This document shows, one piece after another, positions 11,986 to 35,318 of a DNA stretch of 64,000 nt; position 1 is the stretch's first letter, and each line of letters opens with the position of its first letter. The stretch spans positions 806,001 to 870,000 of the forward strand of contig OZ251248.1 of assembly GCA_965240325.2 (NCBI GenBank). Reading direction: 5' to 3'. The notes beneath the pieces were generated by a model. It made no database searches. It worked only from the letters and a program-made list of their open reading frames with translations, and had not been told where the DNA came from. The DNA comes from Rebecca billardiae RCC1528. Its lineage: Eukaryota; Protista; Haptophyta. The position numbers and the translations under genes were made by a program.

Positions 11986-13100
11986 GCGCGGCCGGAGCGG
12001 TCCGTGGCGCGAGCACGCGAGGCGTGCGCGCGGCCGGAGCGGTTGGGGGCGCGAACGCGCGAGGCCGGAAGCGCGCAGTGCGCCAGCGGCGAGTGCGGTG
12101 GGCAGCGGTGGCTGCTGCCGCGCCGCAGCGCCGCACCGCTCCACTCCGGCCCGGGCGGGCCGACCTGGCCGCAGTCCTGCCGCAGGCCGGGACCTGGCGG
12201 TTCGCCGTCGCAGCGGCCGTGGTCGGGCTGGGTCCGTGGTCACCACCGCCAGGCGCCCCCGGCCCAGACGGCGGCAGGCCGGACTCCACGACGAGGTCGA
12301 GGTGCTGACGACGACGATGCCGGATGCGGCGGGCCGCAGCGGCACCGCGTCCGCGGCCCCGCCGGAAGGGCTGGCAGGAGGTCTGCTACGAAGACAGCAG
12401 CTGGCGTCACCCCTACTCCTTGGCCAATATGCCGTCGTCAGTTGTATATCACCATATACCCGTCGTCGTCGACACTCGTCGTAGTATTCTGTCCGCCGTG
12501 TCCGTCCGTGCCCCACTCGGGGACTCCCTCCCGCCAGAGGCAGAGCGCTCTTCAAGAGACTGGTCGGAAAGCCGTTAGCCGATCATCGGCATCGCAGACC
12601 TAGGCTTGTCGTTACAGTACTACGCTTTGGCCATCCGAAAGCTCTGCAGAGGTTCGTCGCCTCCAACAGACGACAGCGACTCGAGCGCGAACAAGATTGA
12701 TATGAAGAACTGCACACATTGGTAGGGTCTTAAACAAACGACATATCGTTTCCCGTTATGTATCGTTTCCCGTTGCAAGTGCGATAGTAATTTAGCCTTT
12801 TCGCGAGTTTTCGGCGACGTCGTCATAAACCCGAGCACCTGCCGCACGCATCCAGCGATTCCGACGCCCCAAATCTACATCGGCGGTCCAATAATAGCCA
12901 TGCTGGCTGACGAAGTCCGTTGTGCCCGGGAATGTGCCACGACTCAGAGTTGCACAGCGCGACGCGACGAAGAGCAGATCGCATCCATGGGCGGTGGCCC
13001 GCATACGATGCGAGGCCGTGAGCACGCTGGAATACCCACGCGCGTGAGCGCGGCTGGACGTCTCGTCCGGCCGGAGCGCGTGAGCCACGCCGCCGCGCCC

Positions 13101-16100
13101 ATGCCCGCGCGTGGCCGACTTCCCGGGGGCTGCCGCGCGTTGCGCGCCGGCCGCCCGCGCCTCCGCCCGCCCAGCGCGTGGGCGGTTTCCGCCCTCGCCG
13201 CGCTGCTGCTCGCGATGGGTGCGCCGGGAGCTGCTGGCGTGTTACCGATTTTCCCGCCGAGCCCGCCGCCGTCTCCGCCGCCGCCGGCTCCGCCACCGAG
13301 CCCTCCGCCGCCGAGCCCGCCGCCGAGCCCGCCTCCGTCGCCTCCACCGAGCCCACCGCCGAGCCCGCCGCCCAGCCCGCCGCCGAGCCCGCCGCCGGCG
13401 CCCCCTCCGAGCCCGCCGCCTTACCCGCCACCCTCGCCTCCGCCTTACTCGCCGCCCTCGCCTCCACCTCGCCCGCCGCCGAGCCCACCGCCGAGCCCGC
13501 CGCCAGGCCCGCCGCCGAGCCCGCCGCCGCCACTGCCGCCGCCGAGCCCTCCTCCCAGCCCGCCACCGGGCCCGCCGCCGCCATCGCCGCCGCCGAGTCC
13601 GCCGCCTTCCCCACCGCCCAGCCCGCCACCCGGCCCGCCCCCGAGCCCGCCGCCTCCATCGCCGCCGCCCAGCCCGCCGCCGCCAACGCCGCCACCGAGC
13701 CCACCGCCAACACCGCCGCCGTCGCCGCCCCCAACGCCGCCACCGAGCCCACCGCCAACACCGCCGCCGTCGCCGCCCCCACCGCGCCCGCCGCCCACTC
13801 CGCCGCCGAGCCCGCCGCCGCGCCCGCCGCCCATCCCGCCACCGTCGCCGCCGCCGCCGTCGCCGCCGCCGAGCCCTCCGCCGCCGAGCCCGCCGCCAAG
13901 CCCGCCGCCGAGCCCGCCACCGTCGCCGCCGCCGCCGAGCCCGCCGCCCAGCCCGCCGCCCAGCCCGCCGCCCAGCCCGCCGCCCAGCCCGCCGCCGTCG
14001 CCGCCGCCGCCGTCACCGCCGCCGAGCCCTCCGCCGCCGAGCCCGCCGCCGAGCCCACCGCCGAGCCCGCCGCCGTCGCCGCCGCCGCCGAGCCCGCCGC
14101 CCTCACCGCCGCCGGCGCCGCCGCCGAGCCCACCGCCCGTGCCACCCTCGCCGCCGCCGAGCCCGCCGCCGCCGAGCCCGCCGCCGTCGCCGCCGCCGAG
14201 CCCGCCTCCGTCGCCGCCGCCGAGCCCGCCGCCGTCGCCGCCGTCGTCGCCGCCGCCCAGCCCGCCGCCCGCGCCCACCATCCGCGCGAACGACGCGTAC
14301 AAGGCCTGCCTCGCCGCGCCCGCCAACTGCACGGCGATCCAGTTCGGAGACGCCGGCCTCACCCGTACGATCCCCACGGAGCTCGGCACGCTCACAAACC
14401 TCGCGCTGCTCGAGCTGTTCGGGAACGACCTCACCGGCACGCTGCCGACGGAGCTGGGCGCGCTGGGCACCTCGCTCAGCGAGGTCAGGCTGTACGCCAA
14501 CTCGCTCTCCGGCACGATCCCCACGGAGCTCGGCGCGCTCTCGCGCACCCTGGTGCATCTGTCTATCTCTGAGAACTCGTGGACGGGCTCGGTGCCGTCG
14601 GAGGTCGGCCTTCTGAGCTCGCTCACCGCCCTCGGCTGCCGCAAGTGCAAGTCGCTCGGCCAGAGCGCCACGCTGCCCTCCGAGCTCGGCGCCCTCACCG
14701 CGCTCGAGATCCTGCTGCTGCAGGGCGCGAGCGTCCGTGGGACGATTCCGCAGGCGCTGGGCGGGCTCACGGCGCTCCAGACGCTCGAGCTGCGCTGGTC
14801 GGAAATGTCCGGGACGTTTCCGAGCGAGCTGGGCGGGATGACCGCGCTCACGCTGCTGCAGATGCGAGACCTCTCGCTCACGGGCACGCTGCCCAGCCAG
14901 ATCGGCGCGCTCACGGCGCTCACCGGGCTCGAGCTGGACAAGAACCGTCTGACTGGCGCGCTCCCGCCGACGCTGAGCCAGCTCACTCGCCTGGAGTACG
15001 CCGACTTGGACGATGGCAATAGCCTGGGCGGCGGCCTTCCGGCGGACATTGGCGCGCTCACCGCGCTCACCGCGCTGTGGCTGCACGCGAACTCGCTCAC
15101 CGCCGCGCTGCCCGCGTCGCTCGGCGGCTGCACGGCGCTCGTCGAGCTCGAGCTGCACGCCAACTCCATTGGCGGCACGCTCCCGCCCGAGATTGGCGGT
15201 CTGAGCGCGCTGAGCAGCCTGCGGCTCGACGACAACTCGCTCCGCGGGCCGCTGCCCGCGAGCCTGGGCTCGCTGACGGCGCTGACCGAGCTGCAGCTGA
15301 GTCCGAACAGCGCGCTGAGCAGCAGCCTGCCCACCGAGCTGGGCGCGCTCACGCGGCTGGAGCGGCTTGAGGCGTATCTCACCGCGCTCAACGGCACACT
15401 GCCGACCGAGCTCGGCCGCTGCACCGCGCTCAGCTACGTGTACGTTCGCGGAAACTCCCTCTCGGGGCCGGTGCCGTCCGAGCTGGGCGCGCTCACACGC
15501 GCCAAGGTGCTGTGGCTGGGGACGCACACGCCCGGGCTGAGCGGCCAGCTGCCCTCGCAGCTCGGGGCGCTCACCGCACTGACTGAGCTCGAGATCCACC
15601 AGAACGCGCTCGCCGGCACGATCCCGGCCGCGCTCGCGGCGCTGACGAAGCTGAAACGGCTGTACCTCTACGAGAATGTTCTCAGCGGCTCCGTCCCCGC
15701 GGCGGCGCTGGGCGCGTGGAGCAAGCTGACCTCGCTCGAGCTGAACGACAACCGGCTGAGCGGCACGCTCCCGACGGCGGTGGGCGCGCTGACAGACTTG
15801 CTGCGCTGGCACCTAACGGCCAACTCGGTCGGCGGCTCGCTGCCGACAGAGCTTGGCCTCGCCACCGACCTGACCGCCCTGCTCTTCGGCTCGAACCGGT
15901 TCGCATCCGCCGTCCCCGCCGAGCTGCTCGCGGGCGTCACCGGCCTCCGCGCGCTCGACCTCGCGCACAACCGGCTGACGGGCGCGCTCCCGACGAGCTT
16001 GGGCAGCGTCGACTACGTGGTGTCGCTCGACGTGTCTCACAACTCCCTGAGTGGCTTCCTGCCGACCGCTTGGCCGTGGGCGGACATGGACTCGCTGGTG

Positions 16101-19100
16101 AGCGCGTCGTTCGCGAATAACACGCGGCTGGAGGGCACGCTGCCGGCAGAGCTGGGCTCGGCGGCGGCGCTCACGAGCTTCGACCTGTCGGCGACGGAGG
16201 TGTGCGGGCCTGGAGCCGAGAGCGTGGCCGCTGTGACGCCGAGTCCGCTGCCGTCGTGCTCGCCGCCGTCCGCGCCGCCGCCCAGCCCGCCGCCCAACCC
16301 GCCCTCGCCGCCGCCGAGCCCGCCGCCGCCCACGCCGCCGCCGAGCCCGCCGCCGAGCCCACCGCCCTCGCCGCCACCCAGCCCGCCGCCGAGCCCGCCC
16401 AGCCCGCCGCCCAGCCCGCCGCCCAGCCCGCCGCCGGGCCCACCGCCCAGCCCTCCGCCGCCGACGCCGCCACCGAGCCCGCCGCCGAGCCCGCCGCCCA
16501 GCCCGCCGCCGAGCCCGCCGCCCAGCCCGCCGCCCAGCCCGCCGCCGTCACCGCCGCCCAGCCCGCCGCCCAGCCCGCCGCCGCCGTTGCCACCGCCGAG
16601 CCCGCCGCCGAGCCCGCCGCCGTCGCCGCCCCCGAGCCCGCCGCCGCCCACACCGCCGCCCAGCCCGCCACCCAGCCCACCGCCCGCCCCGCCGCCGAGC
16701 CCGCCGCCGAGCCCGCCGCCGAGCCCGCCGCCACGCTCGCCGCCGAGCCCGCCGCCCAGCCCGCCGCCCAGCCCGCCGCCGGGTCCGCCGCCCTCGCCGC
16801 CGCCCAGCCCGCCGCCCTCGCCGCCACCGCCCTCGCCGCCGCCCTCACCGCCGCCGAGCCCGCCGCCGAGCCCGCCGCCGAGCCCGCCGCCGAGCCCGCC
16901 GCCGAGCCCGCCGCCGCGCCCGCCACCCAGCCCGCCGCCCAGCCCGCCGCCGAGCCCGCCGCCGTCACCGCCGCCGAGCCCGCCGCCGAGCCCGCCGCCG
17001 CCGAGCCCGCCGCCAAGCCCACCGCCGTCGCCGCCACCGTTGCCCTCGCCGCCGAGCCCGCCGCCCAGCCCGCCGCCATCGCCGCCACCGTCACCGCCGC
17101 CGAGCCCGCCGCCGCCGAGCCCGCCGCCGAGCCCGCCGCCCAGCCCGCCGCCCAGCCCGCCGCCGAGCCCGCCGCCGTCACCGCCGCCCAGCCCACCGCC
17201 CAGCCCGCCGCCACCGAGCCCGCCGCCGAGCCCACCGCCGAGCCCACCGCCGTCGCCGCCGCCCAGCCCGCCGCCGCCCAGCCCGCCGCCCAGCCCGCCG
17301 CCCAGCCCACCGCCATCGCCGCCGCCGAGCCCGCCGCCGAGCCCGCCGCCGAGCCCACCGCCATCGCCGCCCCCGAGCCCGCCGCCAGGCCCACCGCCGT
17401 CCCCGCCGCCGAGCCCGCCGCCGAGCCCGCCACCAAGCCCACCGCCGTCGCCGCCGCCGCTGCCCTCGCCGCCCAGCCCGCCGCCCAGCCCGCCGCCCTC
17501 GCCGCCGCCGTCACCGCCGCCGAGCCCGCCGCCGCCGAGCCCGCCGCCTTCACCGCCGCCGAGCCCGCCGCCATCGCCGCCCCCAAGCCCGCCACCGAGT
17601 CCGCCGCCCTCTCCACCGCCGCCGAGCCCGCCGCCGAGCCCGCCGCCGAGCCCGCCACCAAGCCCGCCGCCGTCACCGCCGCCAGCACCGCCGCCGAGAC
17701 CGCCGCCGAGTCCGCCACCATCCCCGCCGCCCACGCCGCCGCCCTCACCGCCACCGAGCCCGCCTCCGCCGAGCCCGCCGCCGAGCCCACCGCCCAGCCC
17801 GCCGCCGAGTCCGCCGCCGAGCCCACCTCCGCCGAGCCCGCCGCCGAGCCCGCCGCCCAGCCCGCCGCCCAGCCCGCCGCCGAGCCCGCCGCCCAGCCCG
17901 CCACCGCCGAGCCCGCCGCCGTCGCCGCCGCCTGGCCCGCCCCCAAGCCCGCCGCCGAGCCCGCCACCACCTAGCCCGCCGCCATCGCCACCGCCGAGCC
18001 CACCGCCATCGCCGCCGCCGAGCCCGCCGCCGAGCCCGCCGCCGAGCCCACCGCCGAGCCCGCCGCCGTCGCCGCCACCACCGAGCCCGCCGCCCAGCCC
18101 GCCACCGTCGCCGCCTCCCAGCCCGCCGCCGAGCCCACCGCCGAGCCCGCCGCCGTCCCCGCCTCCCAGCCCGCCGCCGAGTCCACCCCCGAGTCCGCCG
18201 CCGTCGCCGCCGCCGAGCCCGCCGCCGCCGTCGCCCCCGCCGAGCCCGCCGCCGAGACCGCCGCCGAGACCGCCGCCGAGCCCGCCACCGCCGTCTCCGC
18301 CGCCGAGCCCACCACCGTCTCCGCCACCCAGCCCTCCGCCGAGCCCACCGCCACCATCGCCACCGCCGAGCCCGCCACCCAGCCCGCCGCCGAGCCCACC
18401 CCCGTCACCACCGCCGACCCCGCCCCCTAGTCCGCCGCCGTCACCTCCGCCAAGCCCACCGCCGCCGTCGCCGCCGCCGAGCCCGCCGCCGAGCCCGCCG
18501 CCGAGCCCACCGCCGAGCCCGCCACCGCCGTCTCCGCCGCCGAGCCCACCGCCGAGCCCGCCGCCGAGCCCGCCGCCGAGCCCGCCGCCGAGCCCGCCGC
18601 CTAGCCCACCGCCGAGCCCGCCGCCGAGCCCACCGCCGAGCCCGCCGCCGAGCCCGCCGCCGAGCCCGCCGCCGAGCCCGCCGCCGAGCCCACCGCCGCC
18701 GAGCCCGCCACCGAGCCCGCCGCCATCCCCGCCGCCATCGCCGCCGCCCAGCCCACCGCCGCCGAGCCCACCACCTTCGCCGCCACCGAGCCCGCCGCCG
18801 AGCCCGCCGCCGTCCCCACCGCCGTCCCCGCCGCCCAGCCCGCCGCCAAGCCCGCCGCCGAGTCCGCCGCCTCCGTCGCCGCCGCCGAGCCCGCCGCCGA
18901 ACCCGCCGCCGAGCCCGCCACCGAGCCCGCCGCCGCCGAGCCCACCACCTTCGCCACCGCCGAGCCCGCCGCCGAGCCCGCCGCCTTCCCCACCGCCGTC
19001 CCCTCCACCGAGCCCGCCCCCGAGCCCGCCGCCGAGCCCGCCGCCGCCGAGCCCGCCGCCCAGCCCGCCGCCCTCGCCACCACCATCGCCGCCCCCGAGC

Positions 19101-28100: not shown

Positions 28101-31100
28101 ACGCAGGCGGTGAGTTCGCTGGCGCGCGCGCTGCTCGCCGGCTCCGTGGTCGGCGAGGCGCCGTTCGAGGCGGTGGCGGCGGCGGTGAACGTCTCCGCCA
28201 CGCGGGTGCCCGCGGCCGACGTGTCCAACGCCACGCGCCCCGGCCCCGGCGGCGGCGGCTCCGTCACGCTCCCCTCGACAGTCCTCAGCGCGGTGCCATC
28301 TGAGTTCATCACCGCGGGTGTGGACCTCGTGTTATGGAGCGTGGCGCGCAACGTGCACGGGGACCCGTCGGCGCAGGCGAACGGCTCGAGCTACGGCGCG
28401 GGGCTGGCGACGCCGGTGTTCTCCGTCTCGCTCTTCGCCGCGGGCGCGCCCACCGCGCTCACCATCGCCGGACTCTCGCCGAGCACGCCCATTCTGCTCG
28501 AGGTGCCTTTTTCGGATGGCGGCGGCGGCGGCGCGGGCGGCGCGGCGCTCGGCGCCCCCGGGACGGGCGATGGCGGCGGCGGCGGCGGCGGTGAGTACGC
28601 GTGCGTGTGGTGGGACACGTACAGCAGCTCGTGGGTGGGCGACGGGTGCGAGGCGGTGCTCGCGCCCTCCGCGCTCACGGGCCTCGTCGCGCAGCACTGC
28701 GCGTGCACGCACCTGACCGACTTTGCGGGTGTCGTTGTTCCTGACACGGCCGAGGGAGCGCGGGACGAGGCGGCGTCGTTCTCATTGAACACCCTCTCGA
28801 CCGACGACCTGGCGGCGGCGGTGGGCGCGGGCGGGCCGGTGCTCGAGCGCAACCCGTACATCTTCTGGCTCGTCATCGCCATCGCCGGCGCCAACTTCCT
28901 CTCCGTCCTCGCCCTCGGCGCGCGAGATCGGCGCGAGATCATATCTCGGCGCGCCAAGATTGACGCGCTGCTGAGGCGCACGCCGGGGCTCACGCCTCGC
29001 GGCGCGGCGCGCAGGGCGAGCGCGCTGCCGAGCGGCCGCGCGGCGGTGCGGCAGGCGGCGGAGGACGCGCTCTTCGGCGTCCGCCCCGCGCGCGCCTCCG
29101 AGCGCGCCTCCTCCGCCTCGTACTCCGCCGCAGCCGACCCGAACTCGACGCGGCGCGACGCGGCCGAGAGCGCTGCGGTCGCGCTCGGCGCCGCACCGGA
29201 CAAGACGATCGCGGACAAGCTCGAGGAGCGGCTGGACGAGCTGGACGACTACGTGGAGGCGCAGCGGCGCGCGGCGGCGGCCACGCTGCAGCGCATCGCG
29301 CGCGGCCGGCGCACGCGCCGCGAGGTCGACGCCGCGCGCCCGGAGATCGAGGGACCTTCGAAGGCGCGGTTGCGCGCCGCCGACCGCTCGAGCGATCACG
29401 CGCTCACAAAGCTGGTACGAATGATCGGCATGCGGATTAGCGCCGACCACTCGCTGCTCGGGATGTTCTTCTCGGACTCGGAGGAGGCGCGCCGCGCCGA
29501 GCTCGCGCAGATCTTCTGGAACACCGCGCTCCTCGGCCTCCTCATCACCTGTCTCCTCTACTCGGGCGGCAGCGGCCCGCCGACCTCGGGGCCTCCGAGC
29601 GTGAATTTAATTGGGGCGCTGTTGACGGCTCTGTTCACGACGGCGCTGAGCGTGCCCGCGCTGCTGCTGTACCGCGCGATCTACCGGTGGGGCTACGGCC
29701 GCCGCGCCGCGCCGCTCTCCAAGCGCATCTTCGCCGCCTTCCTCCACGCCGAGCTCGAGCAGCGCGCGCGCCGCCGCTCGCCGTTCGCTTCGGCCGTGCG
29801 TCACTCCGTCAAGACGGGCGCGTGGTCCCTCTCGCCCCACTCGAGCTTCTCGCTCACGCGCAAGTTCTCGGACCGGCGCGGGGAGGGCGGCGAGGCGCTG
29901 CGCGCCGCGGCGCCCTTCGACCTCGCGCTCGCGCGCCTGCGCGCCGGCACCGTCGCGCCCGAGGGCGCGGCGCCGGCGGGCGCGGGCGCGCCGGGCGCGC
30001 AGCCTCCGGTGCCACCGCCGCCGGTGCCGCCGCCGCCGCCGACGGCCGGCCCCGCCGCCGGCGGCGGCAGCGGCGCGCCCGAGGCGGCCGGCGCGCCGAG
30101 CCGCGTGCGCGTCGGCGCGTGGGGACCGGCGGCGGGCGCGCCCGCCGCGCGGCTCCCGCCCTCGCCGCGCTCGGCCTTCAACGCCGGAGCTACGCCGGGC
30201 GCGGCGCCCGCGGCCGCGCCCGCGGCCGCGCCCGCCGCCGCGCCCGCCGCCGCCGCCGCCGCCGCCGCGGTCGCCGCGCCGCCGCCGGGCGCGGGCGCGC
30301 GCGCCGCCGCCGCCGCAGCTTCGCCGCTCGCGTTCCCCGGCGCGCGGCGACTGAGCGACGGCGCCGCCATCTCGCCGCCGCAGCCGCCGCGCCCGCTGCC
30401 GCGCCCGGCGCGGCCTCTGCCTCGGATCGCCGGCGGCGGCGCGGGCGCGCGCGCCGACCCTGGCGCGGGCTGCACGTCCGCCGCGGCGGCGCGCGCCGCG
30501 CGCATCGACGCGCTGCTACGGGAGACGAACGCGTTCTGCAACCCCACAGCCTCGACCTCGCTCGCCTCCGTGGCGGGCGTGGCGCAGCCCGCCGCCGTCG
30601 CGCCCTCCAGCTTCACGCGGCGCGGCGCGCCGCTCGACTCGGCACGGTCCACGTCCAGCACCGGAAGTTTCCGGAGACTTCCGCCTCTCGAGCGGAGCCA
30701 GGCCAGCCAGGCACGGGGCTCCGCGCACGGGCTCGCGCCGGTCGTGCCCGAGTCGCGCGTGCCCACGGCGGACGCCGCCGCGGCGCACGGCGCCGCGCCG
30801 CCGCCGAGCCACGAGCCCGCGCGCGGCAGCGGCGGCGAGGCCGCCTCGGCTGCGCCGCTGGCCGCGAGCGGCGCGCCGCCGGCGGGTGCGACGACGCCAG
30901 CCGCCGCAGTAGCCATGGCGGCGGCGGGCGCGGCCGAGCCCGCCGCGGCGCGCCCGGGTCGTGGCGCGGGCGTGGCCGCGACGTCGGCGGTGGCGGGGGG
31001 CGTGCCCACGCCCGTCGCCGAGGCCGCGCGCGCCTCGTCGCCGCCGCGCCGCGCCGCGCACCCTCACTCGCCGCCGCTGGCCGCGCTCCGGTCGGGCTTG

Positions 31101-32741
31101 AATGCGGACGGCGGCGCGGTTACGAGCAGCGGCGGCGGCGCCGCGGGCCGCGTCGCGGCCGACCGGCCGATCGCGCTCACGCCCAACCCGCACGCGGGCA
31201 GCCTGCTCGGGGCCGAGCGGGTGCTCACGCCGCAGGGCATCGCCGGCGAGCGCCGGCCAGGCTCGCGCGGCCTGGCGACAGTTGGCGCGCGCGGCGCGGG
31301 CGCCGGGCTCGGCGCGCGCCCCGGCGCGCGCGGCGCGGGCGCGGGGCTGGGCACGCGCCCGCCCGCCCGCCTCTCGCCGCGCGGCGCGGCCGCGGCGCGC
31401 ATCGAGCCGGAGGGGGAGGACCTGAGTGGGTGCGAGCCCTCCGTGCAGCCCGCGCCCGCGCGACGCGCGGCGGAGGCCCGGCGGAGCGGCTCGGGCAGCG
31501 GCTTCCACCTTCCGCGCGCGCCGATGCGCCTGTCGCCGCGCGGCGCGGACGCGGTTCGAATTGAGCCAGAGGCTGGCGACGCGGCGGCAGCCTCTGGCGG
31601 GCCGGGCGGTGCGGCGGCGCCCGCGGCCTCGAGCGGGCGGCGCCCACCCGGCTTCTCGCCGTTGCGCCCGCGCGGCGTCTCCGCCGCGCGCTCGGCCGCG
31701 AGCATCGAGCCCGAGAGCGACGACGACGACGACGACGACGATGGCGCAGGCGGCGGCGGCGCGCTCGGCGGCGCGCTTGGCGGCGGCCGCGCGGCGCTCG
31801 GCTCGCCCGCGCCGACCCCGCCGCCGAGCCCGCCGCCGCCCGCTGCCACGTGCAGCTCGTCGCCGCGCGGCGCGACGGGCGAGCGGCCCCGCGGCCTGCC
31901 GATCTCGCCCGAGCTCCCGCGCCCGCGCCGCGCCATCTCGCCGCGAGGCCCCGCGGCCAGCCCCGCCGCCGCCTCGCCCTACCGGGGCGAGACGGCCTTG
32001 CAGTTTCGGACGGGCTCGCGGCCGCCGCTGCCGCGGGGCGGCGACTCGGGCGCGCCCGCGGCGGAGGGCGCGGCGTCGGGGTCGGGGTCGGGGAGCCCGC
32101 GGCTCTCCGAGCCGGCGGAGGGGCACGCGCTCGACGACGAGACCCTCCAGCTGCTTCGCGCAAAGTTTCAGGCCTTCGACACGGACGGCAACGGCTCGAT
32201 CGACGCAGAGGAGTTCGGCGCCCTCATCGGCGCCCTCGGCTTCAAGCTGCGGCCGCGGAGGGTGCGCGCGCTCGCGCACGAGCTCGACGGCGACGGGAAC
32301 GGGCTGATCGACTACGACGAGCTCGTCGCGTGGTACGACGCGATGGTCGCCGAGGAGGCGGCGCGCGAGGCCAAGCGCGCCAAGGGCTGGCGCGGCGCGC
32401 TGCGCAAGGCCAGGCAGATGCTGGAGGTGCCGCCGCGCGCGCGGCTCGGGATGGCGTGGCTCGCGATGTGGGCGATCTTCACGGTGATGGCGATCCTTGT
32501 CGTCGCGCTCGCGATCACCTTCGGCGCGGAGGAGACGCGCTGGCTGCTGCTCAGCTGGTCGCTCGCCGAGGTGCAGACGCTCGGGCTCGAGGAGCCGGTC
32601 CTGATCGCGCTCACCGTGCTGCTGCCGTTCCTGCTCGACCGGCTGCTCTCGCAGGGCGGCGCGACGGGCGAGGCGATCAACGAGATGCTCGCGCAGAGCG
32701 TGGGCATGGCCGTCGGGATGGTGCACACCCTGTGCGGCTAA
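13101..32741 (+). CDS. Giant intronless polycystin-1/REJ-like receptor with extensin stalks, plant-type LRRs, IPT, REJ, GPS, 5 TM, IQ and EF-hands (~6546 aa)
   Basis: Single ORF, open from 12900; ATG 13101 precedes the signal-like AVSALAALLLAMGAPGAAG. LRRs LxxLxLxxNxLxGxLPxELG span ~14340-16210. IPT-like units (PPGGPALGGTAVTLVGSGF; PARGDANGGTDVTLSGAGF) span ~24870-25470. The REJ end reads NRPPFGGSLEVAPPAGVALLTTFELRADGWTDDDADDLPLSYAF. The GPS reads CVWWD..WVGDGC..CACTHLTDF at ~28600-28725. TM helices lie at ~28860, 29510, 29610, 32450 and 32540. EF-hands: FDTDGNGSIDAEEF and LDGDGNGLIDYDEL. Confidence 0.9.
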   Translation: MPARGRLPGGCRALRAGRPRLRPPSAWAVSALAALLLAMGAPGAAGVLPIFPPSPPPSPPPPAPPPSPPPPSPPPSPPPSPPPSPPPSPPPSPPPSPPPAPPPSPPPYPPPSPPPYSPPSPPPRPPPSPPPSPPPGPPPSPPPPLPPPSPPPSPPPGPPPPSPPPSPPPSPPPSPPPGPPPSPPPPSPPPSPPPPTPPPSPPPTPPPSPPPTPPPSPPPTPPPSPPPPRPPPTPPPSPPPRPPPIPPPSPPPPSPPPSPPPPSPPPSPPPSPPPSPPPPSPPPSPPPSPPPSPPPSPPPSPPPPSPPPSPPPPSPPPSPPPSPPPSPPPPSPPPSPPPAPPPSPPPVPPSPPPSPPPPSPPPSPPPSPPPSPPPSPPPSPPSSPPPSPPPAPTIRANDAYKACLAAPANCTAIQFGDAGLTRTIPTELGTLTNLALLELFGNDLTGTLPTELGALGTSLSEVRLYANSLSGTIPTELGALSRTLVHLSISENSWTGSVPSEVGLLSSLTALGCRKCKSLGQSATLPSELGALTALEILLLQGASVRGTIPQALGGLTALQTLELRWSEMSGTFPSELGGMTALTLLQMRDLSLTGTLPSQIGALTALTGLELDKNRLTGALPPTLSQLTRLEYADLDDGNSLGGGLPADIGALTALTALWLHANSLTAALPASLGGCTALVELELHANSIGGTLPPEIGGLSALSSLRLDDNSLRGPLPASLGSLTALTELQLSPNSALSSSLPTELGALTRLERLEAYLTALNGTLPTELGRCTALSYVYVRGNSLSGPVPSELGALTRAKVLWLGTHTPGLSGQLPSQLGALTALTELEIHQNALAGTIPAALAALTKLKRLYLYENVLSGSVPAAALGAWSKLTSLELNDNRLSGTLPTAVGALTDLLRWHLTANSVGGSLPTELGLATDLTALLFGSNRFASAVPAELLAGVTGLRALDLAHNRLTGALPTSLGSVDYVVSLDVSHNSLSGFLPTAWPWADMDSLVSASFANNTRLEGTLPAELGSAAALTSFDLSATEVCGPGAESVAAVTPSPLPSCSPPSAPPPSPPPNPPSPPPSPPPPTPPPSPPPSPPPSPPPSPPPSPPSPPPSPPPSPPPGPPPSPPPPTPPPSPPPSPPPSPPPSPPPSPPPSPPPSPPPSPPPSPPPPLPPPSPPPSPPPSPPPSPPPPTPPPSPPPSPPPAPPPSPPPSPPPSPPPRSPPSPPPSPPPSPPPGPPPSPPPSPPPSPPPPSPPPSPPPSPPPSPPPSPPPSPPPSPPPRPPPSPPPSPPPSPPPSPPPSPPPSPPPPSPPPSPPPSPPPLPSPPSPPPSPPPSPPPSPPPSPPPPSPPPSPPPSPPPSPPPSPPPSPPPSPPPSPPPPSPPPSPPPSPPPSPPPSPPPPSPPPSPPPSPPPSPPPSPPPSPPPSPPPSPPPSPPPGPPPSPPPSPPPSPPPSPPPSPPPLPSPPSPPPSPPPSPPPSPPPSPPPPSPPPSPPPSPPPSPPPSPPPSPPPSPPPPSPPPSPPPSPPPSPPPSPPPAPPPRPPPSPPPSPPPTPPPSPPPSPPPPSPPPSPPPSPPPSPPPSPPPPSPPPSPPPSPPPSPPPSPPPSPPPPSPPPSPPPGPPPSPPPSPPPPSPPPSPPPSPPPSPPPSPPPSPPPSPPPSPPPSPPPPSPPPSPPPSPPPSPPPSPPPSPPPSPPPSPPPSPPPSPPPSPPPSPPPPSPPPSPPPRPPPRPPPSPPPPSPPPSPPPSPPPSPPPSPPPPSPPPSPPPSPPPSPPPSPPPTPPPSPPPSPPPSPPPPSPPPSPPPSPPPSPPPSPPPPSPPPSPPPSPPPSPPPSPPPSPPPSPPPSPPPSPPPSPPPSPPPSPPPSPPPSPPPPSPPPSPPPSPPPSPPPSPPPPSPPPSPPPSPPPSPPPSPPPSPPPSPPPSPPPSPPPPSPPPSPPPNPPPSPPPSPPPPSPPPSPPPSPPPSPPPSPPPSPPPSPPPSPPPSPPPPSPPPSPPPSPPPSPPPSPPPPTSPPSPPPSPPPSPPPSPPPPSPPPSPPPRPPPSPPPSPPPSPPPSPPPSPPPSPPPPSPPPSPPPSPPPSPPPSPPPPSPPPSPPPSPPPSPPPSPPPPSPPPSPPPSPPPSPPPSPPPPSPPPSPPPSPPPSPPPSPPPPSPPPSPPPSPPPSPPPSPPPSPPPSPPPSPPPSPPPSPPPSPPPSPPPPSPPPSPPPSPPPSPPPSPPPPSPPPSPPPSPPPSPPPSPPPPSPPPSPPPSPPPSPPPSPPPSPPPSPPPSPPPSPPPSAPPSPPPSPPPSPPPSPPPPSPPPSPPPSPPPSPPPSPPPPSPPPSPPPSPPPSPPPSPPPSPPPPAPPPSPPPSPPPSPPPSPPPPSPPPSPPPSPPPSPPPSPPPSPPPAPPPSPPPSPPPSPPPAPPPSPPPSPPPAPPPSPPPSPPPSPPPSPPPPSPPPSPPPSPPPSPPPSPPPPSPPPSPPPSPPPSPPPSPPPSPPPPAPPPSPPPSPPPSPPPSPPPPSPPPSPPPSPPPSPPPSPPPPSPPPSPPPSPPPSPPPSPPPPSPPPSPPPSPPPSPPPSPPPSPPPSPPPSPPPSPPPSPPPSPPPSPPPSPPPPSPPPSPPPSPPPSPPPSPPPPSSPPSPPPSPPPSPPPSPPPPSPPPSPPPSPPPSPPPSPPPRPPPSPPPSPPPSPPPSPPPSPPPSPPPPSPPPSPPPSPPPSPPPSPPPPLPPPSPPPTPPPSPPPSPPPPSPPPSPPPSPPPSPPPSPPPPSPPPSPPPSPPPSPPPSPPPPSPPPSPPPSPPPSPPPSPPPPAPPPAPPPSPPPTPPPSPPPPSPPPSPPPLPPPSPPPSPPPPSPPPSPPPSPPPSPPPSPPPPSPPPSPPPSPPPSPPPSPPPPSPPPSPPPSPPPSPPPSPPPPSPPPSPPPSPPPSPPPSPPPPSPPPSPPPTPPPSPPPSPPPPSPPPSPPPSPPPSPPPSPPPPTSPPSPPPSPPPSPPPSPPPPSPPPSPPPSPPPSPPPSPPPPSPPPSPPPSPPPSPPPSPPPPSPPPSPPPGPPPSPPPSPPPSPPPSPPPRPPPSPPPSPPPSPPPIPPPSPPPPSPPPSPPPSPPPSPPPSPPPPSPPPSPPPSPPPSPPPSPPPVPPPSPPPSPPPPSPPPSPPPSPPPSPPPSPPPPLRPPSPPPSPPPSPPPSPPPPSPPPRTPPAPPPSPPPSPPPPSPPPSPPPSPPPFPPPSPPPPSPPPSPPPSPPPLPPPSPPPPSPPPSPPPSPPPSPPPLPPPSPPPPSPPPSPPPSPPPSPPPSPLPPRLPPSPPPTPPPSPPPPSPPPRPPPSPPPLPPPSPPPPRPPPSPPPPLQPPSPPPSPPPPPPLPPPSPPLAPSPPPSPPPSPPPSRPPPPPPPSPPPSPPPSPPPPSPPPSPPPPSPPPSPPPSPPPSPPPGSESYLALTVDASVEDLSAPSAQQQLAAAVAEEADVPTGWVRVHSVAPASARVVLAYFTPSAGGGADDVLSRLQARSLEQLSARLSLSVLAPPVPVVQGCTEPSARNYDSAAEVDDGGCVAYSPPPGAPPASPPSPPPSPPPSSPPAPPPAPPPPPPSPPPSSPPAPPPAPPPPPSSPPPPPRTAPHAPPSPPSPPPSAPPSAPPLPPSPPPHAPPRAPPSPPPSPPPSPPPRAPPSPPPSPPPSPPPRAPPSPPPSPPPSPPPAPPPSPPPPSPPPSPPPSPPPPSPPPSPPPSPPSPPPPPRTEPFPPPSPPSPPPAPPPAPPPSPPPSPPPAAPPAPPPSPPPSPPPSPPPSPPPSPPPSPPPRPPPPTPPPSPPPPPPPAIRVTILSAQPTGAPDGARGVSVELAGAGFSALQQDDGDEAGGGESAQCAFTPAPGGVLNASAPPILSRARVLDDARVLCDAPAAGSRGTYSLGLALDGVGVSGDADVGGLFAPVRFDVYSIDDGVVVRELRPPGGPALGGTAVTLVGSGFADYGPGQLCCVLGGAGRNCTAPASLLPPDAADGSSRAVCVLPILAVADGGAPAPPAPSTQPLEISLSGGAPLSTTASGVGFSTFGEASLSAVSPARGDANGGTDVTLSGAGFDALRGGALVRVRFGAALADPPTHVSNTSIVVRTRYGAEGPAVVSIALNGRQFFAPAAAPGFEFVGLHAPRLLSAAFNAEATALLLRFDAQPTDRAGMGSAVGACATVLDDATLAIVAGGAGRAASAPPQCYWADDSTLVAQLSARTAVAPGSRIGVRAAALRPALCGEPCAAALASGAEAATIDADAPCGEGVPCPSPVAVIRGPASVSACPYAPLQLDGTASSRGGIKPPAFAWRVDPTRSARATSLNAKLAALPARTPVLSLGGGSADSGQPPELGVTGEFVFALQVTSFLGVVSAPAEWRVARGAGASPRLQIDGAPELTARAGAETHVIGLAALAPCWPDSFEPGMRFEWSLLGVAESASGAAIELGDAAAAGVRLPALADETAASLLLPRFSLSAGYTYTLQLRASMLAAPAQAASASVRVLVAPQPLRAVVAGGDRRVPTDNTLVVDASASFDPDDASGAEGEAAGLGFAWAVSNGTAPGGAPVPLPPGAVNTSGSIFTLAARALFPGNYRLSLVVSKAGREPAAEAVGLEVVAGAVPTIQFEPLRLPKYASVFERNTQRLAIETRLDAASLEAEARGFVTFRYTWSAHRVGALGALEDAGLELGDSGAVTTTGADRPTLAFRSGVLAPGAVYSFRLRVIGGLQDAQGEVTVTINRPPFGGSLEVAPPAGVALLTTFELRADGWTDDDADDLPLSYAFTHAPRASAAAPSAAAADAAASTSLGAASSAPAADVLLPVGNRTLRVRVTDALGGAADAEADVSVATPDALFASPAGAAGGSAAKDRAGADAALADALTRARAAVATGATATANQLVSALAGILDETPAGANASEASAVVGELLAVTAAAAAMGGSQTAESRAATAVALASVLGGGSRALSAGAQLSGLSQVAALAAQSVGSGVDASTAASLLSATDAALGDASTPLGAADEAALGAAATQAVSSLARALLAGSVVGEAPFEAVAAAVNVSATRVPAADVSNATRPGPGGGGSVTLPSTVLSAVPSEFITAGVDLVLWSVARNVHGDPSAQANGSSYGAGLATPVFSVSLFAAGAPTALTIAGLSPSTPILLEVPFSDGGGGGAGGAALGAPGTGDGGGGGGGEYACVWWDTYSSSWVGDGCEAVLAPSALTGLVAQHCACTHLTDFAGVVVPDTAEGARDEAASFSLNTLSTDDLAAAVGAGGPVLERNPYIFWLVIAIAGANFLSVLALGARDRREIISRRAKIDALLRRTPGLTPRGAARRASALPSGRAAVRQAAEDALFGVRPARASERASSASYSAAADPNSTRRDAAESAAVALGAAPDKTIADKLEERLDELDDYVEAQRRAAAATLQRIARGRRTRREVDAARPEIEGPSKARLRAADRSSDHALTKLVRMIGMRISADHSLLGMFFSDSEEARRAELAQIFWNTALLGLLITCLLYSGGSGPPTSGPPSVNLIGALLTALFTTALSVPALLLYRAIYRWGYGRRAAPLSKRIFAAFLHAELEQRARRRSPFASAVRHSVKTGAWSLSPHSSFSLTRKFSDRRGEGGEALRAAAPFDLALARLRAGTVAPEGAAPAGAGAPGAQPPVPPPPVPPPPPTAGPAAGGGSGAPEAAGAPSRVRVGAWGPAAGAPAARLPPSPRSAFNAGATPGAAPAAAPAAAPAAAPAAAAAAAAVAAPPPGAGARAAAAAASPLAFPGARRLSDGAAISPPQPPRPLPRPARPLPRIAGGGAGARADPGAGCTSAAAARAARIDALLRETNAFCNPTASTSLASVAGVAQPAAVAPSSFTRRGAPLDSARSTSSTGSFRRLPPLERSQASQARGSAHGLAPVVPESRVPTADAAAAHGAAPPPSHEPARGSGGEAASAAPLAASGAPPAGATTPAAAVAMAAAGAAEPAAARPGRGAGVAATSAVAGGVPTPVAEAARASSPPRRAAHPHSPPLAALRSGLNADGGAVTSSGGGAAGRVAADRPIALTPNPHAGSLLGAERVLTPQGIAGERRPGSRGLATVGARGAGAGLGARPGARGAGAGLGTRPPARLSPRGAAAARIEPEGEDLSGCEPSVQPAPARRAAEARRSGSGSGFHLPRAPMRLSPRGADAVRIEPEAGDAAAASGGPGGAAAPAASSGRRPPGFSPLRPRGVSAARSAASIEPESDDDDDDDDGAGGGGALGGALGGGRAALGSPAPTPPPSPPPPAATCSSSPRGATGERPRGLPISPELPRPRRAISPRGPAASPAAASPYRGETALQFRTGSRPPLPRGGDSGAPAAEGAASGSGSGSPRLSEPAEGHALDDETLQLLRAKFQAFDTDGNGSIDAEEFGALIGALGFKLRPRRVRALAHELDGDGNGLIDYDELVAWYDAMVAEEAAREAKRAKGWRGALRKARQMLEVPPRARLGMAWLAMWAIFTVMAILVVALAITFGAEETRWLLLSWSLAEVQTLGLEEPVLIALTVLLPFLLDRLLSQGGATGEAINEMLAQSVGMAVGMVHTLCG
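13254..14277 (+). repeat. Ser-Pro3/4 (extensin-like) coding repeat, block 1
   Basis: Degenerate ccg ccg ccg agc units. Confidence 0.95.
16258..23338 (+). repeat. Ser-Pro3/4 coding repeat, block 2 (~7.1 kb)
   Basis: Uninterrupted SPPP/SPPPP repeats. Rare variants recur (PLPSPPS at ~17040 and ~17460; PPPPTSPP at ~19110 and ~21980), showing higher-order duplication. Confidence 0.95.
23703..24487 (+). repeat. Ser/Ala-Pro coding repeat, block 3
   Basis: SPPP/APPP repeats. Confidence 0.9.
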
Positions 32742-33554
32742 CTCGCCCGCGTTCGTTTGCGGGCCCGACGCCCATGCTGCGCACGCTGCTGGCCTTGCTC
32801 CGCCGCGGCTTGATGGTAGGATTTTCATTTTCGATATGTCGATATCATCAGACGATCAAATTCGACAAATAAATAATCGTCGCGTCCTGCGCCTGCGGCT
32901 CGGCAGTCTTTTGATTTGACACATCAATTCCACCCGTTCCACGGGGTGTTGTTCGCCTCCAGGCGCCCCGCGCCCGGCTCGTGGCGGCAGGATGGCGATC
33001 AAGTGGCGCGTGGCCGACGTGCGGCCCGAGATATACGTGACTTGGGCGCCGCGCGCCGCGCTGGCGGGGCGGCCGGGACCCATGCGCGCCTTCGAACCCC
33101 CGGCGCCCGCGTGCTCATCGGCTTCCTCCGCCTGCGAGTAGCCCACGACCGCGCCCGCCGCACTCTTTGAGTGGGTTGACCGCGCCCGAGCCTGCTCGCC
33201 GCCGAGCGCAGGGATGAGTTGAGCACGGCGCGAGGCGGCGATGGCGGTCGGGCGATCGCATGAGCCCATTTGGGCCCCATCTGCCACGGTGCGACCGCTT
33301 CAGCATGCGTATGTGACCCCACATGTCATGGTTGTCTCATGTCGGGTAGCAGGTGAGCACTGTCGGCCAGCATGTCCGCGCGCGCGCGCGCGCGCTCGCG
33401 CAAGGCTATACGGGTCGGATGCCGCTCCGTGGCGTCTCGTGATGTCTGCACTACGCAAACTGGCTGGCACGATTGGTCCGCATCTGTAGTTATGCGACGC
33501 CTGCCGTGTTCGCGACGAGAACTCAAGCAAGTTCTTCTGGCGACCAGAGTTGCC

Positions 33555-34730: not shown

Positions 34731-35318
34731 GAGTTGCCGTCAGCATTGACGCACGTTGCGAGCTGGCAGAACAGTGAAGGTCATGCCCTTGCTGGCCCAC
34801 GCTGGGCAATACACGGTAATCAGCATGTCCTGATGCCAACTGTGATGTGTTTCCGACCCGTCTGGCCCTGCACAGGCGCGGCGCGCGCGGACACGCTGGC
34901 CGACAGTGCTCGCCCGCTACCCGACATCCATGACAAGTGGGGTCACATACGCATGCTGAAGCGGTCGCGCCGTGGCAGATGGGGCCCAAATGGGCTCATG
35001 CGATCGCCCGACCGCCATCGCCGCCTCGCGCCGTGCTCAACTCATCCCTGCGCTCGGCGGCGAGCAGGCTCGGGCGCAGTCAACGCACTCAAAGCGGGCG
35101 GCGGCCGCGGTCGCGGGCGACTTGCAGGCGGAGGAAGCCGATGCGCACGCGGACGCCGGGGGTTCGAAGGCGCGCGTGGGTCCAGGCCACCCCGCCAGCG
35201 CGGCGCGCGGCGCAAACAGCAACTCCTCGACAGCAGAGCGCGTGGATCGCCGCGACGTCGACGTCGCCCGCCCGCCCCCGCCCCCTCTCAACGGCCGCGG
35301 CCCCGCGTGCGCCCACTG

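What the first reader, a model, noticed from the sequence alone, without database searches (positions are those of the whole stretch)
13101..32741. A 6500-aa intronless polycystin-1-like receptor fused to plant-style LRR-extensin modules
Seen: signal peptide, SPPP, ~26 plant-type LRRs, ~2350 aa of SPPP, IPT x2, REJ, a GPS with an intact HL/T cleavage triad (28710-28718), and membrane helices, with no intron across 19.6 kb although most neighbouring genes are spliced. Known: REJ+GPS+TM defines polycystin-1-type proteins, and LRR+extensin defines plant LRX cell-wall sensors. Inference: an autoproteolysed surface receptor holds a ligand-binding LRR far from the membrane, possibly for mechanosensing, adhesion or recognition. 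I do not know of this combination having been described.
Basis: partly seen in the sequence, partly recalled or inferred. Interest (0 to 1): 0.8.

Follow-up and report, generated by a model that had tools for sequence, protein, structure and literature searches.

The report
Giant stalked polycystin-1-like surface receptor
A very GC-rich alga, probably a pavlovophyte haptophyte, has one 19.6-kb reading frame for a 6,546-residue surface protein: a leucine-rich-repeat head on a serine-proline rod about 0.9 micrometre long, anchored by the self-cleaving, channel-less front half of a polycystin-1-type receptor; I found no paper describing this layout, and the one public gene model I checked cuts the rod off.

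Summary
Window 13101-32741 (+) is one open frame of 6,546 codons. In order it encodes:
- a signal peptide
- a Ser-Pro3 rod (352 aa)
- about 25 plant-type LRRs with Cys caps
- a second Ser-Pro3 rod (2,359 aa)
- a small conserved domain
- a third rod (261 aa)
- two IPT/TIG domains
- REJ (Pfam 1.3e-45)
- a GAIN domain with HL|T at 28710-28718
- five TM helices with an IQ motif and a canonical EF-hand pair

The rods are translated. Ser uses both AGC and TCN codons, 97% of codons are Ser or Pro, and every length change is a multiple of three.

The base is the front half of polycystin-1 (REJ, GAIN, TM1-5), with no PLAT domain and no channel half. The "plant LRX" part is a resemblance, not membership. 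The closest named relatives are from Pavlovales haptophytes.

In Diacronema lutheri the same rod-plus-REJ/GAIN/5-TM layout is one 5,921-codon frame. The public model is cut to 3,751 aa. The LRR head was not seen in any relative outside this genome.

This scan has already met paralogues with other heads on other DNA of the same genome (s1-341030, s1-363204, s1-338770, s1-360711 and others).

Short in-frame introns and an assembly join inside the rod are not excluded. Function is inferred: a tethered adhesion or force sensor.

The parts
13101..13241 (+). Start codon and signal peptide (Arg-rich n-region, Ala/Leu-rich hydrophobic core)
   Evidence: ATG at 13101. Hydrophobic peak at ORF aa 99-117. 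In-frame GC3 rises from 0.60-0.67 upstream to about 0.9 downstream.
13242..14279 (+). Distal Ser-Pro3 rod (about 350 aa, roughly 0.11 micrometre if it forms a polyproline-II helix)
   Evidence: In 13224-14279, 352 codons include 259 Pro and 64 Ser, and Ser is coded by both AGC and TCG.
14280..16259 (+). LRR head: about 25 plant-type 24-residue repeats with a Cys pair at each end
   Evidence: Pfam LRR_14 1.4e-40, LRR_1 4.5e-38, LRR_8 3.9e-27. 23 strict-pattern repeats. Best relatives are only 30-43% identical and come from bacteria, plants and diatoms.
16260..23336 (+). Main Ser-Pro3 rod: 2,359 codons, roughly 0.73 micrometre as a polyproline-II helix
   Evidence: 1,776 Pro and 519 Ser. Ser codons are AGC 331, TCG 125 and others 63. 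Pro runs are 3 long (469 times) or 4 long (80 times), and the frame is kept throughout. DNA units match only about 70-73%. The codon mix is even along the array, with no change point.
23337..23702 (+). Conserved inter-rod domain of about 120 aa, ending in a Cys-bounded PGCT...NYD...C motif; fold unknown
   Evidence: 32-34% identical to the same position in L001 and in D. lutheri L002. No Pfam hit and no usable Atlas hit.
23703..24485 (+). Proximal Ser/Ala-Pro rod (261 codons, roughly 0.08 micrometre)
   Evidence: 182 Pro, 44 Ser and 20 Ala.
24486..25466 (+). IPT/TIG immunoglobulin-like domains (two detected)
   Evidence: Pfam TIG 1.6e-13, two stretches. Relatives carry 1-3 TIG domains at the same place.
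25467..27629 (+). REJ module (Pfam core 26448-27590)
   Evidence: Pfam REJ 1.3e-45. 1,999 library proteins match 25467-28940 at E<=0.001, the best at 44% identity over the full length.
27630..28739 (+). GAIN domain (helical subdomain A, beta-sandwich subdomain B) with the GPS motif at 28599-28727
   Evidence: AlphaFold2 model with pLDDT 77.7 and pTM 0.75. Foldseek top hits are GAIN domains of BAI3, BAI2, CELSR1 and latrophilin, E 1e-9 to 1e-7.
28710..28718 (+). His-Leu-Thr autoproteolysis triad (predicted cut between Leu and Thr)
   Evidence: CAC CTG ACC. His, Thr and Phe are invariant and Leu nearly invariant in 19 family members.
28860..28922 (+). TM1
   Evidence: Hydropathy peak 2.33. 53% identical to D. 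lutheri TM1.
29286..29318 (+). IQ-type calmodulin-binding motif (LQxxxRGxxxR) in the first cytosolic loop, where polycystin-1 has PLAT
   Evidence: Family consensus IQRxxRGxxAR with invariant Gly and Arg. The Pfam IQ hit is only weak, E 0.062. The model of this loop is all-helical, with no beta-sandwich.
29502..29669 (+). TM2 (29502-29564) and TM3 (29601-29669)
   Evidence: Hydropathy peaks. This block is 33-40% identical in relatives.
29727..32099 (+). Ala/Gly/Pro-rich low-complexity cytosolic loop of about 790 aa, variable in length among relatives; the place where short unrecognised introns could hide
   Evidence: Composition. In-frame GC3 is 0.87-0.98. The D. lutheri relative has about 390 aa here.
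32154..32336 (+). EF-hand pair with two canonical 12-residue Ca2+ loops
   Evidence: Pfam EF-hand_7 3.3e-12. 42% identical to D. lutheri over this block and TM4-TM5.
32454..32651 (+). TM4 (32454-32522) and TM5 (32580-32651)
   Evidence: Hydropathy peaks 2.71 and 1.93. Aligned to the last residues of D. lutheri P0152.
32739..32741 (+). Stop codon; true C-terminus
   Evidence: The alignment to P0152 runs to residue 3749 of 3751. GC falls to 0.68 downstream. No further related ORF lies downstream.

Best explanation
This is one gene for a giant membrane-anchored surface glycoprotein of a pavlovophyte-type haptophyte.

Shown:
- After a signal peptide, the ectodomain is a chain of three Ser-Pro3 rods carrying an LRR solenoid near the far end.
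- A small conserved domain, IPT/TIG domains, a REJ module and a GAIN domain lie next to the membrane.
- The GAIN domain has the invariant His-Leu-Thr site.
- The membrane part has five helices. In a 35%-identical relative these fold like TM1-TM5 of polycystin-1.
- An IQ motif sits where polycystin-1 has PLAT, and a canonical EF-hand pair sits in the large cytosolic loop. There is no channel half.

Inferred:
- The prolines are hydroxylated and glycosylated. The rods then form stiff polyproline-II helices at about 3.1 Angstrom per residue, which places the LRR head roughly 0.8-0.9 micrometre from the membrane.
- The GAIN domain cuts itself, leaving the 5,200-residue outer piece held non-covalently.
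- Binding of a ligand or surface to the LRR head, or drag on the rod, pulls on the GAIN domain. That pull either changes the 5-TM bundle or releases the outer piece and exposes the new N-terminus.
- The signal is read out or tuned through Ca2+/calmodulin (IQ, EF-hands), possibly with a separate channel partner.
For: Single coding unit:
- The frame is unbroken over 6,546 codons, with in-frame GC3 about 0.9 throughout.
- The main rod is 97% Ser/Pro. Ser uses two unrelated codon families, and all length changes are multiples of three.
- DNA repeat identity is only about 70%, and there is no change point along the array.

Domains:
- Pfam LRR, TIG, REJ and EF-hand.
- GAIN fold.
- Invariant His/Thr/Phe/Cys.

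Family:
- 44% identical relatives carry TIG-REJ-GPS-EF-hand. Named ones are D. lutheri KAG8459354.1 and a Pavlovales sp. CCMP2436 protein.
- D. lutheri contig JAGTXO010000041.1 has a single 5,921-codon frame: signal peptide, about 1,850 aa of Ser-Pro3, the same inter-rod domain, TIG, REJ, GPS and the 5-TM/EF-hand base.
- A second assembly (L001) has the rod running in frame into the same inter-rod domain.

Base:
- The top structural match is polycystin-1 residues 3070-3610 (Z 16.4, rmsd 3.9, 191 aligned), well above all non-EF-hand rows.
- The C-terminus is colinear with the relative's C-terminus.

Rod physics:
- 429 residues gave 133 nm in MST3 (PMC11015965).
- 12.4 Angstrom per tetrapeptide in the TLP-4 glycofibril (PMC11725842).
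Against: - There is no transcript, protein or localisation evidence.
- The LRR head was not found joined to REJ/GPS in any of 150 family representatives or 55 giant LRR proteins. Its link to the base therefore rests on this assembly alone, plus unchecked scan notes.
- The Pfam GPS score is below the curated cut-off in this protein.
- The membrane-module model is of a relative, not of this protein, and has only moderate confidence (pLDDT 66.9). Foldseek did not find polycystin-1.
- I found no report of proline hydroxylation or glycosylation in haptophytes.
- Signalling is wholly inferred.
Confidence: 0.6

Rival explanations
1. The anatomy is the same, but the protein is mainly a structural or adhesive surface fibre and not a signalling receptor. 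It could be a one-molecule hair, a tether for scales or mucilage, or a gamete agglutinin-like adhesin. The REJ/GAIN/5-TM part would then serve only as an anchor and release point.
For: - Stand-alone glycosylated polyproline or tetrapeptide chains do form fibres hundreds of nanometres long (PMC11015965, PMC11725842).
- Chlamydomonas agglutinins are cane-shaped hydroxyproline-rich head-and-shaft flagellar molecules (PMC2113723, abstract listed).
- REJ/GPS proteins of sea urchin sperm and Ectocarpus male gametes are linked to gamete recognition (PMC4700764).
- No catalytic or channel domain is present.
Against: The cytosolic IQ motif and the canonical EF-hand pair are conserved across the family. 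So is the self-cleavage triad. That conservation is hard to explain for a passive anchor.
Confidence: 0.22
2. The reading frame is a chimera. An LRR-plus-rod gene and a rod-plus-REJ/GAIN gene were joined by assembly collapse inside the Ser-Pro3 array, or they are transcribed separately.
For: - The 7-kb low-complexity array is the kind of sequence where assemblies break. The L001 contig ends inside its rod.
- No relative outside this genome shows LRR joined to REJ.
- No RNA data could be obtained.
Against: - Both flanks are in the same frame as the array.
- Codon and unit composition change smoothly, with no junction.
- Rods lead in frame into the same inter-rod domain in two other assemblies.
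- D. lutheri was assembled from PacBio reads with N50 23 kb (PMC8379373). This shows that arrays of this size can be spanned, although that is not this window's assembly.
Confidence: 0.1
3. The long ORF is an accident of very high GC content, or a dead gene, and is not expressed as a protein.
For: Stop codons are rare at 75-86% GC. The opposite strand of the rod also has a 2,310-codon ORF, and frame +1 of the rod has no stops.
Against: - GC3 is about 0.9 only in this frame.
- Six independent Pfam families lie in order in one frame.
- Ser is kept through non-interconvertible codons.
- Relatives are 30-45% identical, with invariant functional residues.
Confidence: 0.02

Closest known systems
Polycystin-1 family (PKD1, PKD1L, PKDREJ, sea urchin REJ proteins)
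   Same: - REJ module followed by a GAIN/GPS domain with His-Leu-Thr just before TM1.
- N-terminal LRRs also occur in PKD1 (my own knowledge).
- The 5-TM bundle of a relative aligns best to PKD1 residues 3070-3610.
   Different: - No PLAT domain; an IQ motif sits in its place.
- No six-helix channel-like half; five TM helices instead of eleven.
- An EF-hand pair lies inside a cytosolic loop.
- There are no PKD repeats, C-type lectin or WSC domains. Three Ser-Pro3 rods totalling about 2,970 residues replace them.
Chlamydomonas MST3 / Mstax, the axial protein of the mastigoneme (PMC11015965; bioRxiv 10.1101/2024.12.24.630281)
   Same: - A giant (about 8,000 aa) hydroxyproline-rich chain running from a free distal Ser-Pro rod, past carbohydrate- or ligand-binding domains and a very long proline array, to a polycystin-type membrane domain and a long cytosolic tail.
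- It shows that single glycosylated polyproline-II chains can span hundreds of nanometres.
   Different: - MST3 has a PKD2-like channel-type domain completed by SIP, not REJ/GAIN/PKD1-type TM1-5.
- Its array is the Hyp11-(X2Hyp)n-Hyp12 repeat, which binds an MST1 sheath, not plain Ser-Pro3.
- It has lectin domains, not LRRs.
- It comes from a green alga, not a haptophyte.
- No sequence homology was tested or claimed.
Adhesion GPCRs (latrophilin, BAI, CELSR, GPR126)
   Same: The GAIN fold and GPS site are the best structural matches. Both have a long adhesive ectodomain held by a self-cleaved GAIN domain, consistent with force-sensing logic.
   Different: No seven-helix secretin-like domain and no HormR. 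There are five helices of polycystin-1 type.
Plant LRX (LRR-extensin) proteins and extensins
   Same: Plant-type 24-residue LRRs followed by a Ser-Pro(n) array.
   Different: - About 25 LRRs rather than about 10.
- Rods lie on both sides of the LRR block.
- The unit is Ser-Pro3 (469 units) with few Ser-Pro4 (80).
- There is no Tyr in the main rod, so no extensin cross-link motif.
- The protein is membrane-anchored, and no specific similarity to LRX was found.
Ectocarpus Esi0130_0068 (PMC4700764)
   Same: An algal REJ plus GPS multi-pass membrane protein, proposed as a gamete recognition receptor under positive selection.
   Different: It is 1,427 aa with 6-7 TM helices and a polycystin channel hit. 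It has no rod and no LRR.

Membership tests
Polycystin-1 family | REJ domain in the ectodomain | tested here: met
   Pfam PF02010 at 1.3e-45, 156 bits against a cut-off of 25.
Polycystin-1 family | GAIN domain with a GPS His-Leu-Thr/Ser site directly before TM1 | tested here: met
   The fold matches solved GAIN domains at E 1e-9. HLT lies at 28710-28718 and is invariant in the family. The Pfam GPS score itself is just under the cut-off. Cleavage itself was not tested.
Polycystin-1 family | PLAT domain in the first cytosolic loop | tested here: not met
   No PLAT hit in Pfam. The loop is all-helical in the model of a relative and carries an IQ-type motif.
Polycystin-1 family | Eleven TM helices, the last six forming a PKD-channel-like domain | tested here: not met
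   There are five hydrophobic helices and no PKD_channel hit. The ORF ends colinear with the end of the D. lutheri relative, and nothing related lies downstream.
Polycystin-1 family | TM1-TM5 bundle of the PKD1 type | tested here: inconclusive
   The model of relative P0008 (35% identical, pLDDT 66.9) gives 8z6b_A residues 3070-3610 as top match, Z 16.4 over 191 residues. Foldseek and sequence searches did not find it. This window's own protein was not modelled, because the module exceeds the size limit.
Adhesion GPCR | Seven-helix secretin-like membrane domain after the GAIN domain | tested here: not met
   Five helices and no 7tm_2 hit.
Plant LRX / extensin | Ser-Pro(3-5) array with Tyr-based cross-link motifs, in a secreted wall protein without a membrane anchor | tested here: not met
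   The main rod has no Tyr in 2,359 codons, and the first rod has two. Five TM helices are present.
Plant LRX / extensin | Specific sequence kinship of the LRR domain to LRX | tested here: not met
   The best 120 matches are generic: bacteria, plant LRR receptor kinases and diatoms at 30-43% identity. None is named LRX.
MST3/Mstax-type mastigoneme axis | PKD2-like membrane domain and Hyp11-(X2Hyp)n-Hyp12 repeats | tested here: not met
   No PKD_channel hit. Pro runs are almost all 3 or 4 long, with none of 11-12.
Hydroxyproline-rich glycoprotein (general) | Prolines hydroxylated and O-glycosylated, forming a polyproline-II rod | not testable with these tools
   Only the sequence pattern is seen. 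I found no haptophyte data in the review I checked.

The most novel reading that the evidence does not exclude
Pavlovophyte haptophytes carry a family of micrometre-long, single-molecule glycoprotein 'hairs' that are themselves GAIN-gated receptors. Interchangeable binding heads (here LRRs; lectin arrays, RCC1 and integrin-type propellers in paralogues noted by this scan) sit on Ser-Pro3 rulers above a channel-less polycystin-1 base with built-in Ca2+/calmodulin sites. Together they would form a surface recognition and force-sensing repertoire. This would also mean that extensin-like Ser-Pro(n) rods are used outside the green lineage.
Probability: 0.3. Interest if true: 0.8.

Novelty: new variant of a known kind. 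Interest (0 to 1): 0.62.

Why it matters
- Force sensing: if real, this is a natural design in which a self-cleaving GAIN domain is loaded through a stiff tether nearly a micrometre long. The force-sensing ideas for polycystin-1 and adhesion GPCRs could then be tested in a small, culturable alga.
- Evolution of polycystin-1: the REJ/GAIN/TM1-5 front half can exist and be conserved without the channel half.
- Proline rods outside the green lineage: kilobase-scale Ser-Pro3 arrays, usually discussed for plants and green algae, occur in a haptophyte.
- Annotation: gene predictors cut such genes short. The public D. lutheri model lacks about 1,950 N-terminal residues. It also splices out a stretch holding a conserved Cys. 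Proteome surveys therefore undercount this family.

Tried and rejected
No expression, splice or continuity data were obtained.
- Whole-protein search for giant relatives of the TIG-REJ-GAIN part: one weak TIG-only hit.
- Search for giant proteins with a similar LRR block: 55 hits, none with REJ or GPS in their precomputed Pfam lists.
- Search with the LRR block alone: no close orthologue and no named Pavlovales hit.
- Pattern scan of the 150 family representatives for plant-type LRRs: none.
- Inter-rod domain: no Pfam hit and Atlas feature scores of 0.83 or less. Both fold jobs had gone to other parts, so its fold was not predicted.
- Sequence searches of the PDB with the ectodomain (no hit) and the membrane-module profile (only calmodulin-type EF-hands).
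- Foldseek on the membrane model: only EF-hand lobes.
- Exact look-up of a neighbouring ORF to identify the assembly: not on record. The species stays unresolved. No library protein is more than about 47% identical over the full REJ-GAIN part, so this gene is not in the searched collections.
- Intron hunt by in-frame GC3 dips: only noise-level dips, including one at the conserved GPS site. This cannot exclude 100-nt GC-rich introns.
- Rejected: green-alga origin, because the named relatives are Pavlovales. Rejected: continuation of the gene past 32741.
Full report
**What is there.** The window is very GC-rich: 0.68-0.87 in 2-kb steps, and 0.86 over the repeat. ORF listing gives one frame open from 12900 to 32741 on the + strand, 6,613 codons. 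In-frame GC3 is 0.60-0.67 in the first 60 codons and about 0.9 from the ATG at 13101 to the stop. I therefore take 13101 as the start, giving 6,546 codons. The opposite-strand ORF of 2,310 codons over the repeat and the stop-free +1 frame show that openness alone means little at this GC content. The case has to rest on other evidence.

**Domains, in order.**
- A hydrophobic signal-peptide core lies at ORF aa 99-117.
- Three Ser-Pro3 blocks have 352, 2,359 and 261 codons.
- Between the first two lies an LRR block. Pfam gives LRR_14 1.4e-40 and LRR_8 3.9e-27. 23 repeats match a strict plant-type 24-residue pattern, and about 25-26 fit by periodicity. A Cys pair sits at each end (read).
- After the main rod comes a domain of about 120 residues with no Pfam or Atlas match.
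- Then follow the third rod, two TIG stretches (1.6e-13) and REJ (1.3e-45).
- A GPS hit falls just under Pfam's cut-off (20.6 against 22.5 bits).
- Five hydrophobic helices follow, and an EF-hand pair (3.3e-12) lies before the last two.
- There is no PLAT and no PKD_channel hit.

**Are the rods translated?** In the 2,359-codon rod, 97% of codons are Ser or Pro. Ser is written with AGC (331), TCG (125) and four other codons. AGY and TCN cannot be exchanged by a single synonymous step, so the amino acid, not the DNA, is what is kept. Pro third positions vary: CCG 1,307, CCA 248, CCC 166, CCT 55. Tandem Repeats Finder gives only 70-73% matches between DNA units. Pro runs of 3 (469 times) and 4 (80 times) alternate without ever shifting the frame. 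Codon and unit composition drift smoothly along the array, with no change point. That argues against two different arrays having been joined.

**GAIN domain.** An alignment of 27297-28949 with 18 relatives has His, Thr, Phe and two Cys of the GPS invariant, and Leu nearly so. The AlphaFold2 model (pLDDT 77.7, pTM 0.75) shows a helical subdomain followed by a beta-sandwich whose last strand follows the cleavage site. Foldseek's best PDB matches are the GAIN domains of BAI3, BAI2, CELSR1, latrophilin-1, GPR126 and others, E 1e-9 to 1e-6.

**Relatives and organism.**
- An exhaustive profile-free search with 25467-28940 found 1,999 proteins at E<=0.001. The best were 44% identical over the whole query.
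- The top ones carry TIG-REJ-GPS, and several have a C-terminal EF-hand.
- The named ones are Diacronema lutheri KAG8459354.1 ("EF-hand domain-containing protein", 3,751 aa) and a "REJ domain-containing protein" of Pavlovales sp. CCMP2436.
- The D. lutheri genome has 73% GC and 45% single-exon genes (PMC8379373), like this window.
- An earlier scan note called the genome a haptophyte (s1-350539). My result agrees and narrows it to the Pavlovales neighbourhood.
- The species is not resolved, and the gene itself is not in the searched collections.

**The rod belongs to the family.** On the D. lutheri contig (L002, GC 0.75) the frame of the annotated gene stays open upstream, giving 5,921 codons. 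These encode a signal peptide, about 1,850 residues of Ser-Pro3, the same inter-rod domain, an array of about 100-residue repeats, TIG, REJ, GPS and the same membrane module. The public model starts only after the rod.

On a second assembly (L001, GC 0.66) the called protein P0002 begins at the inter-rod domain. The frame is nevertheless open upstream through 576 Pro-rich codons, up to the contig end. The inter-rod domain is 32-34% identical among the three, including a PGCT...NYD...C motif.

The public D. lutheri model splices out three in-frame, stop-free segments.
- Two are credible introns (GTGCGC...CAG, 99 and 120 nt). Both are absent from this window's gene.
- The third encodes the conserved second Cys and a Pro linker, so it is probably a mis-call.

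The lesson for this finding is that an unbroken frame does not prove the absence of introns in such genomes. The 790-residue low-complexity loop (29727-32099) is where one could hide.

**Membrane base.** The window's C-terminal part aligns to the D. lutheri protein block by block and in the same order. The blocks are GPS and TM1, an IQ-type helix with TM2 and TM3, and the EF-hand pair with TM4 and TM5. The alignment runs to within two residues of the relative's end, so 32741 is the true stop. Nothing related lies downstream.

The family consensus of loop 1 contains IQRxxRGxxAR with invariant Gly and Arg. The window has LQRIARGRRTR at 29286-29318. Pfam's IQ score is weak (0.062).

This protein's module exceeds the size limit, so I modelled the most compact relative instead (P0008:1060-1609, 35% identical to the window, pLDDT 66.9).
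- Foldseek saw only calmodulin-like lobes.
- The full structural scan put polycystin-1 (8z6b_A, residues 3070-3610, i.e. TM1 to TM5) first, at Z 16.4, rmsd 3.9 Angstrom and 191 aligned residues. The next rows were EF-hands at Z of 11.8 or less.
- The tool's own note says helical bundles can reach about Z 13 by chance, so this is supportive, not conclusive.

This agrees with the separate first-reader note on the same window (s1-350830).

**The LRR head.** I could not confirm the LRR head outside this genome. None of the 150 family representatives has plant-type LRRs. None of 55 giant LRR proteins has REJ or GPS. The LRR block alone finds only generic matches at 30-43% identity in bacteria, plant receptor kinases and diatoms. 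Scan notes report other LRR-headed paralogues (s1-341030, s1-353051, s1-360711). They also report lectin- and RCC1-headed ones (s1-363204, s1-338770, s1-350569, s1-350669) elsewhere in this genome. I could not check them, and they are not independent evidence.

**How it probably works.** The functional reading is all inference.
- Length: at 3.1 Angstrom per residue, the three rods would be about 0.11, 0.73 and 0.08 micrometre. That figure comes from 429 residues spanning 133 nm in MST3 (PMC11015965) and 12.4 Angstrom per tetrapeptide in TLP-4 (PMC11725842). The LRR head would sit roughly 0.8-0.9 micrometre out.
- Mechanism: a self-cleaved GAIN domain at the foot of such a lever suggests a contact or drag sensor, or a releasable adhesin. 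The conserved IQ motif and the two canonical EF-hand loops point to Ca2+/calmodulin coupling.
- Alternative: a purely structural or adhesive role, as a hair, a scale tether or an agglutinin-like gamete adhesin, is a serious rival.

**Comparison with the known.**
- It shares REJ, GAIN/GPS and probably TM1-5 with polycystin-1. It fails two defining features, PLAT and the channel half, so I do not file it as a polycystin-1 orthologue.
- It shares the GAIN logic with adhesion GPCRs but not the 7-TM domain.
- It resembles plant LRX only in having LRRs next to a Ser-Pro array.
- Its nearest functional analogue is Chlamydomonas MST3/Mstax. That protein is a giant hydroxyproline-rich axis with a polycystin-type anchor (PMC11015965; bioRxiv 10.1101/2024.12.24.630281). 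The anchor (PKD2-like), the repeat type and the lineage all differ.
- Full-text searches found no paper describing REJ/GAIN proteins with proline rods, or such proteins in haptophytes.

**Limits.**

Noticed in passing
L002:4051-21813 (Diacronema lutheri JAGTXO010000041.1, reversed): The public model KAG8459354.1 (3,751 aa) is a truncated version of a 5,921-codon open frame. It lacks the signal peptide and about 1,850 residues of Ser-Pro3. It also starts with a Met that is not in the long frame.
   Followed up: yes
L002:19777-19896 and L002:21589-21687: Two short GC-rich introns (GTGCGC...CAG, 120 and 99 nt) are both in frame and free of stop codons. In such genomes an unbroken ORF can therefore hide introns. 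A third annotated 'intron' (10309-10521) encodes a conserved Cys and a Pro linker and is probably a mis-call.
   Followed up: partly
window 23337-23702; L001:1706-2110; L002:9790-10330: A conserved domain of about 120 residues, with no Pfam match, sits between proline rods. It ends in a PGCT...NYD...C motif and its fold is unknown. By position it could play the role that SEA-type modules play in mucins, but this was not tested.
   Followed up: partly
window 33046-33336 and 34923-35213: A 291-nt inverted repeat (95% complementary) lies just downstream of the gene. It flanks 1.6 kb containing a 375-codon minus-strand ORF (33326-34453) with no Pfam hit. It looks like a DNA-transposon-like insertion.
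   Followed up: partly
window 16037-22969 (-): A 2,310-codon ORF lies on the opposite strand of the Ser-Pro3 array. It is a by-product of the stop-poor GC-rich repeat, not a gene.
   Followed up: partly
window 35470-36441 (+): The next gene downstream has a DnaJ domain (Pfam 2.7e-24). The tail of its ORF looks like read-through into an intron.
   Followed up: no
L001:2-1729: The Logan contig of SRR30664515 ends inside a Ser-Pro4-type rod that runs in frame into protein P0002. Short-read assemblies break in these arrays, so family members in public collections are systematically truncated at the N-terminus.
   Followed up: yes
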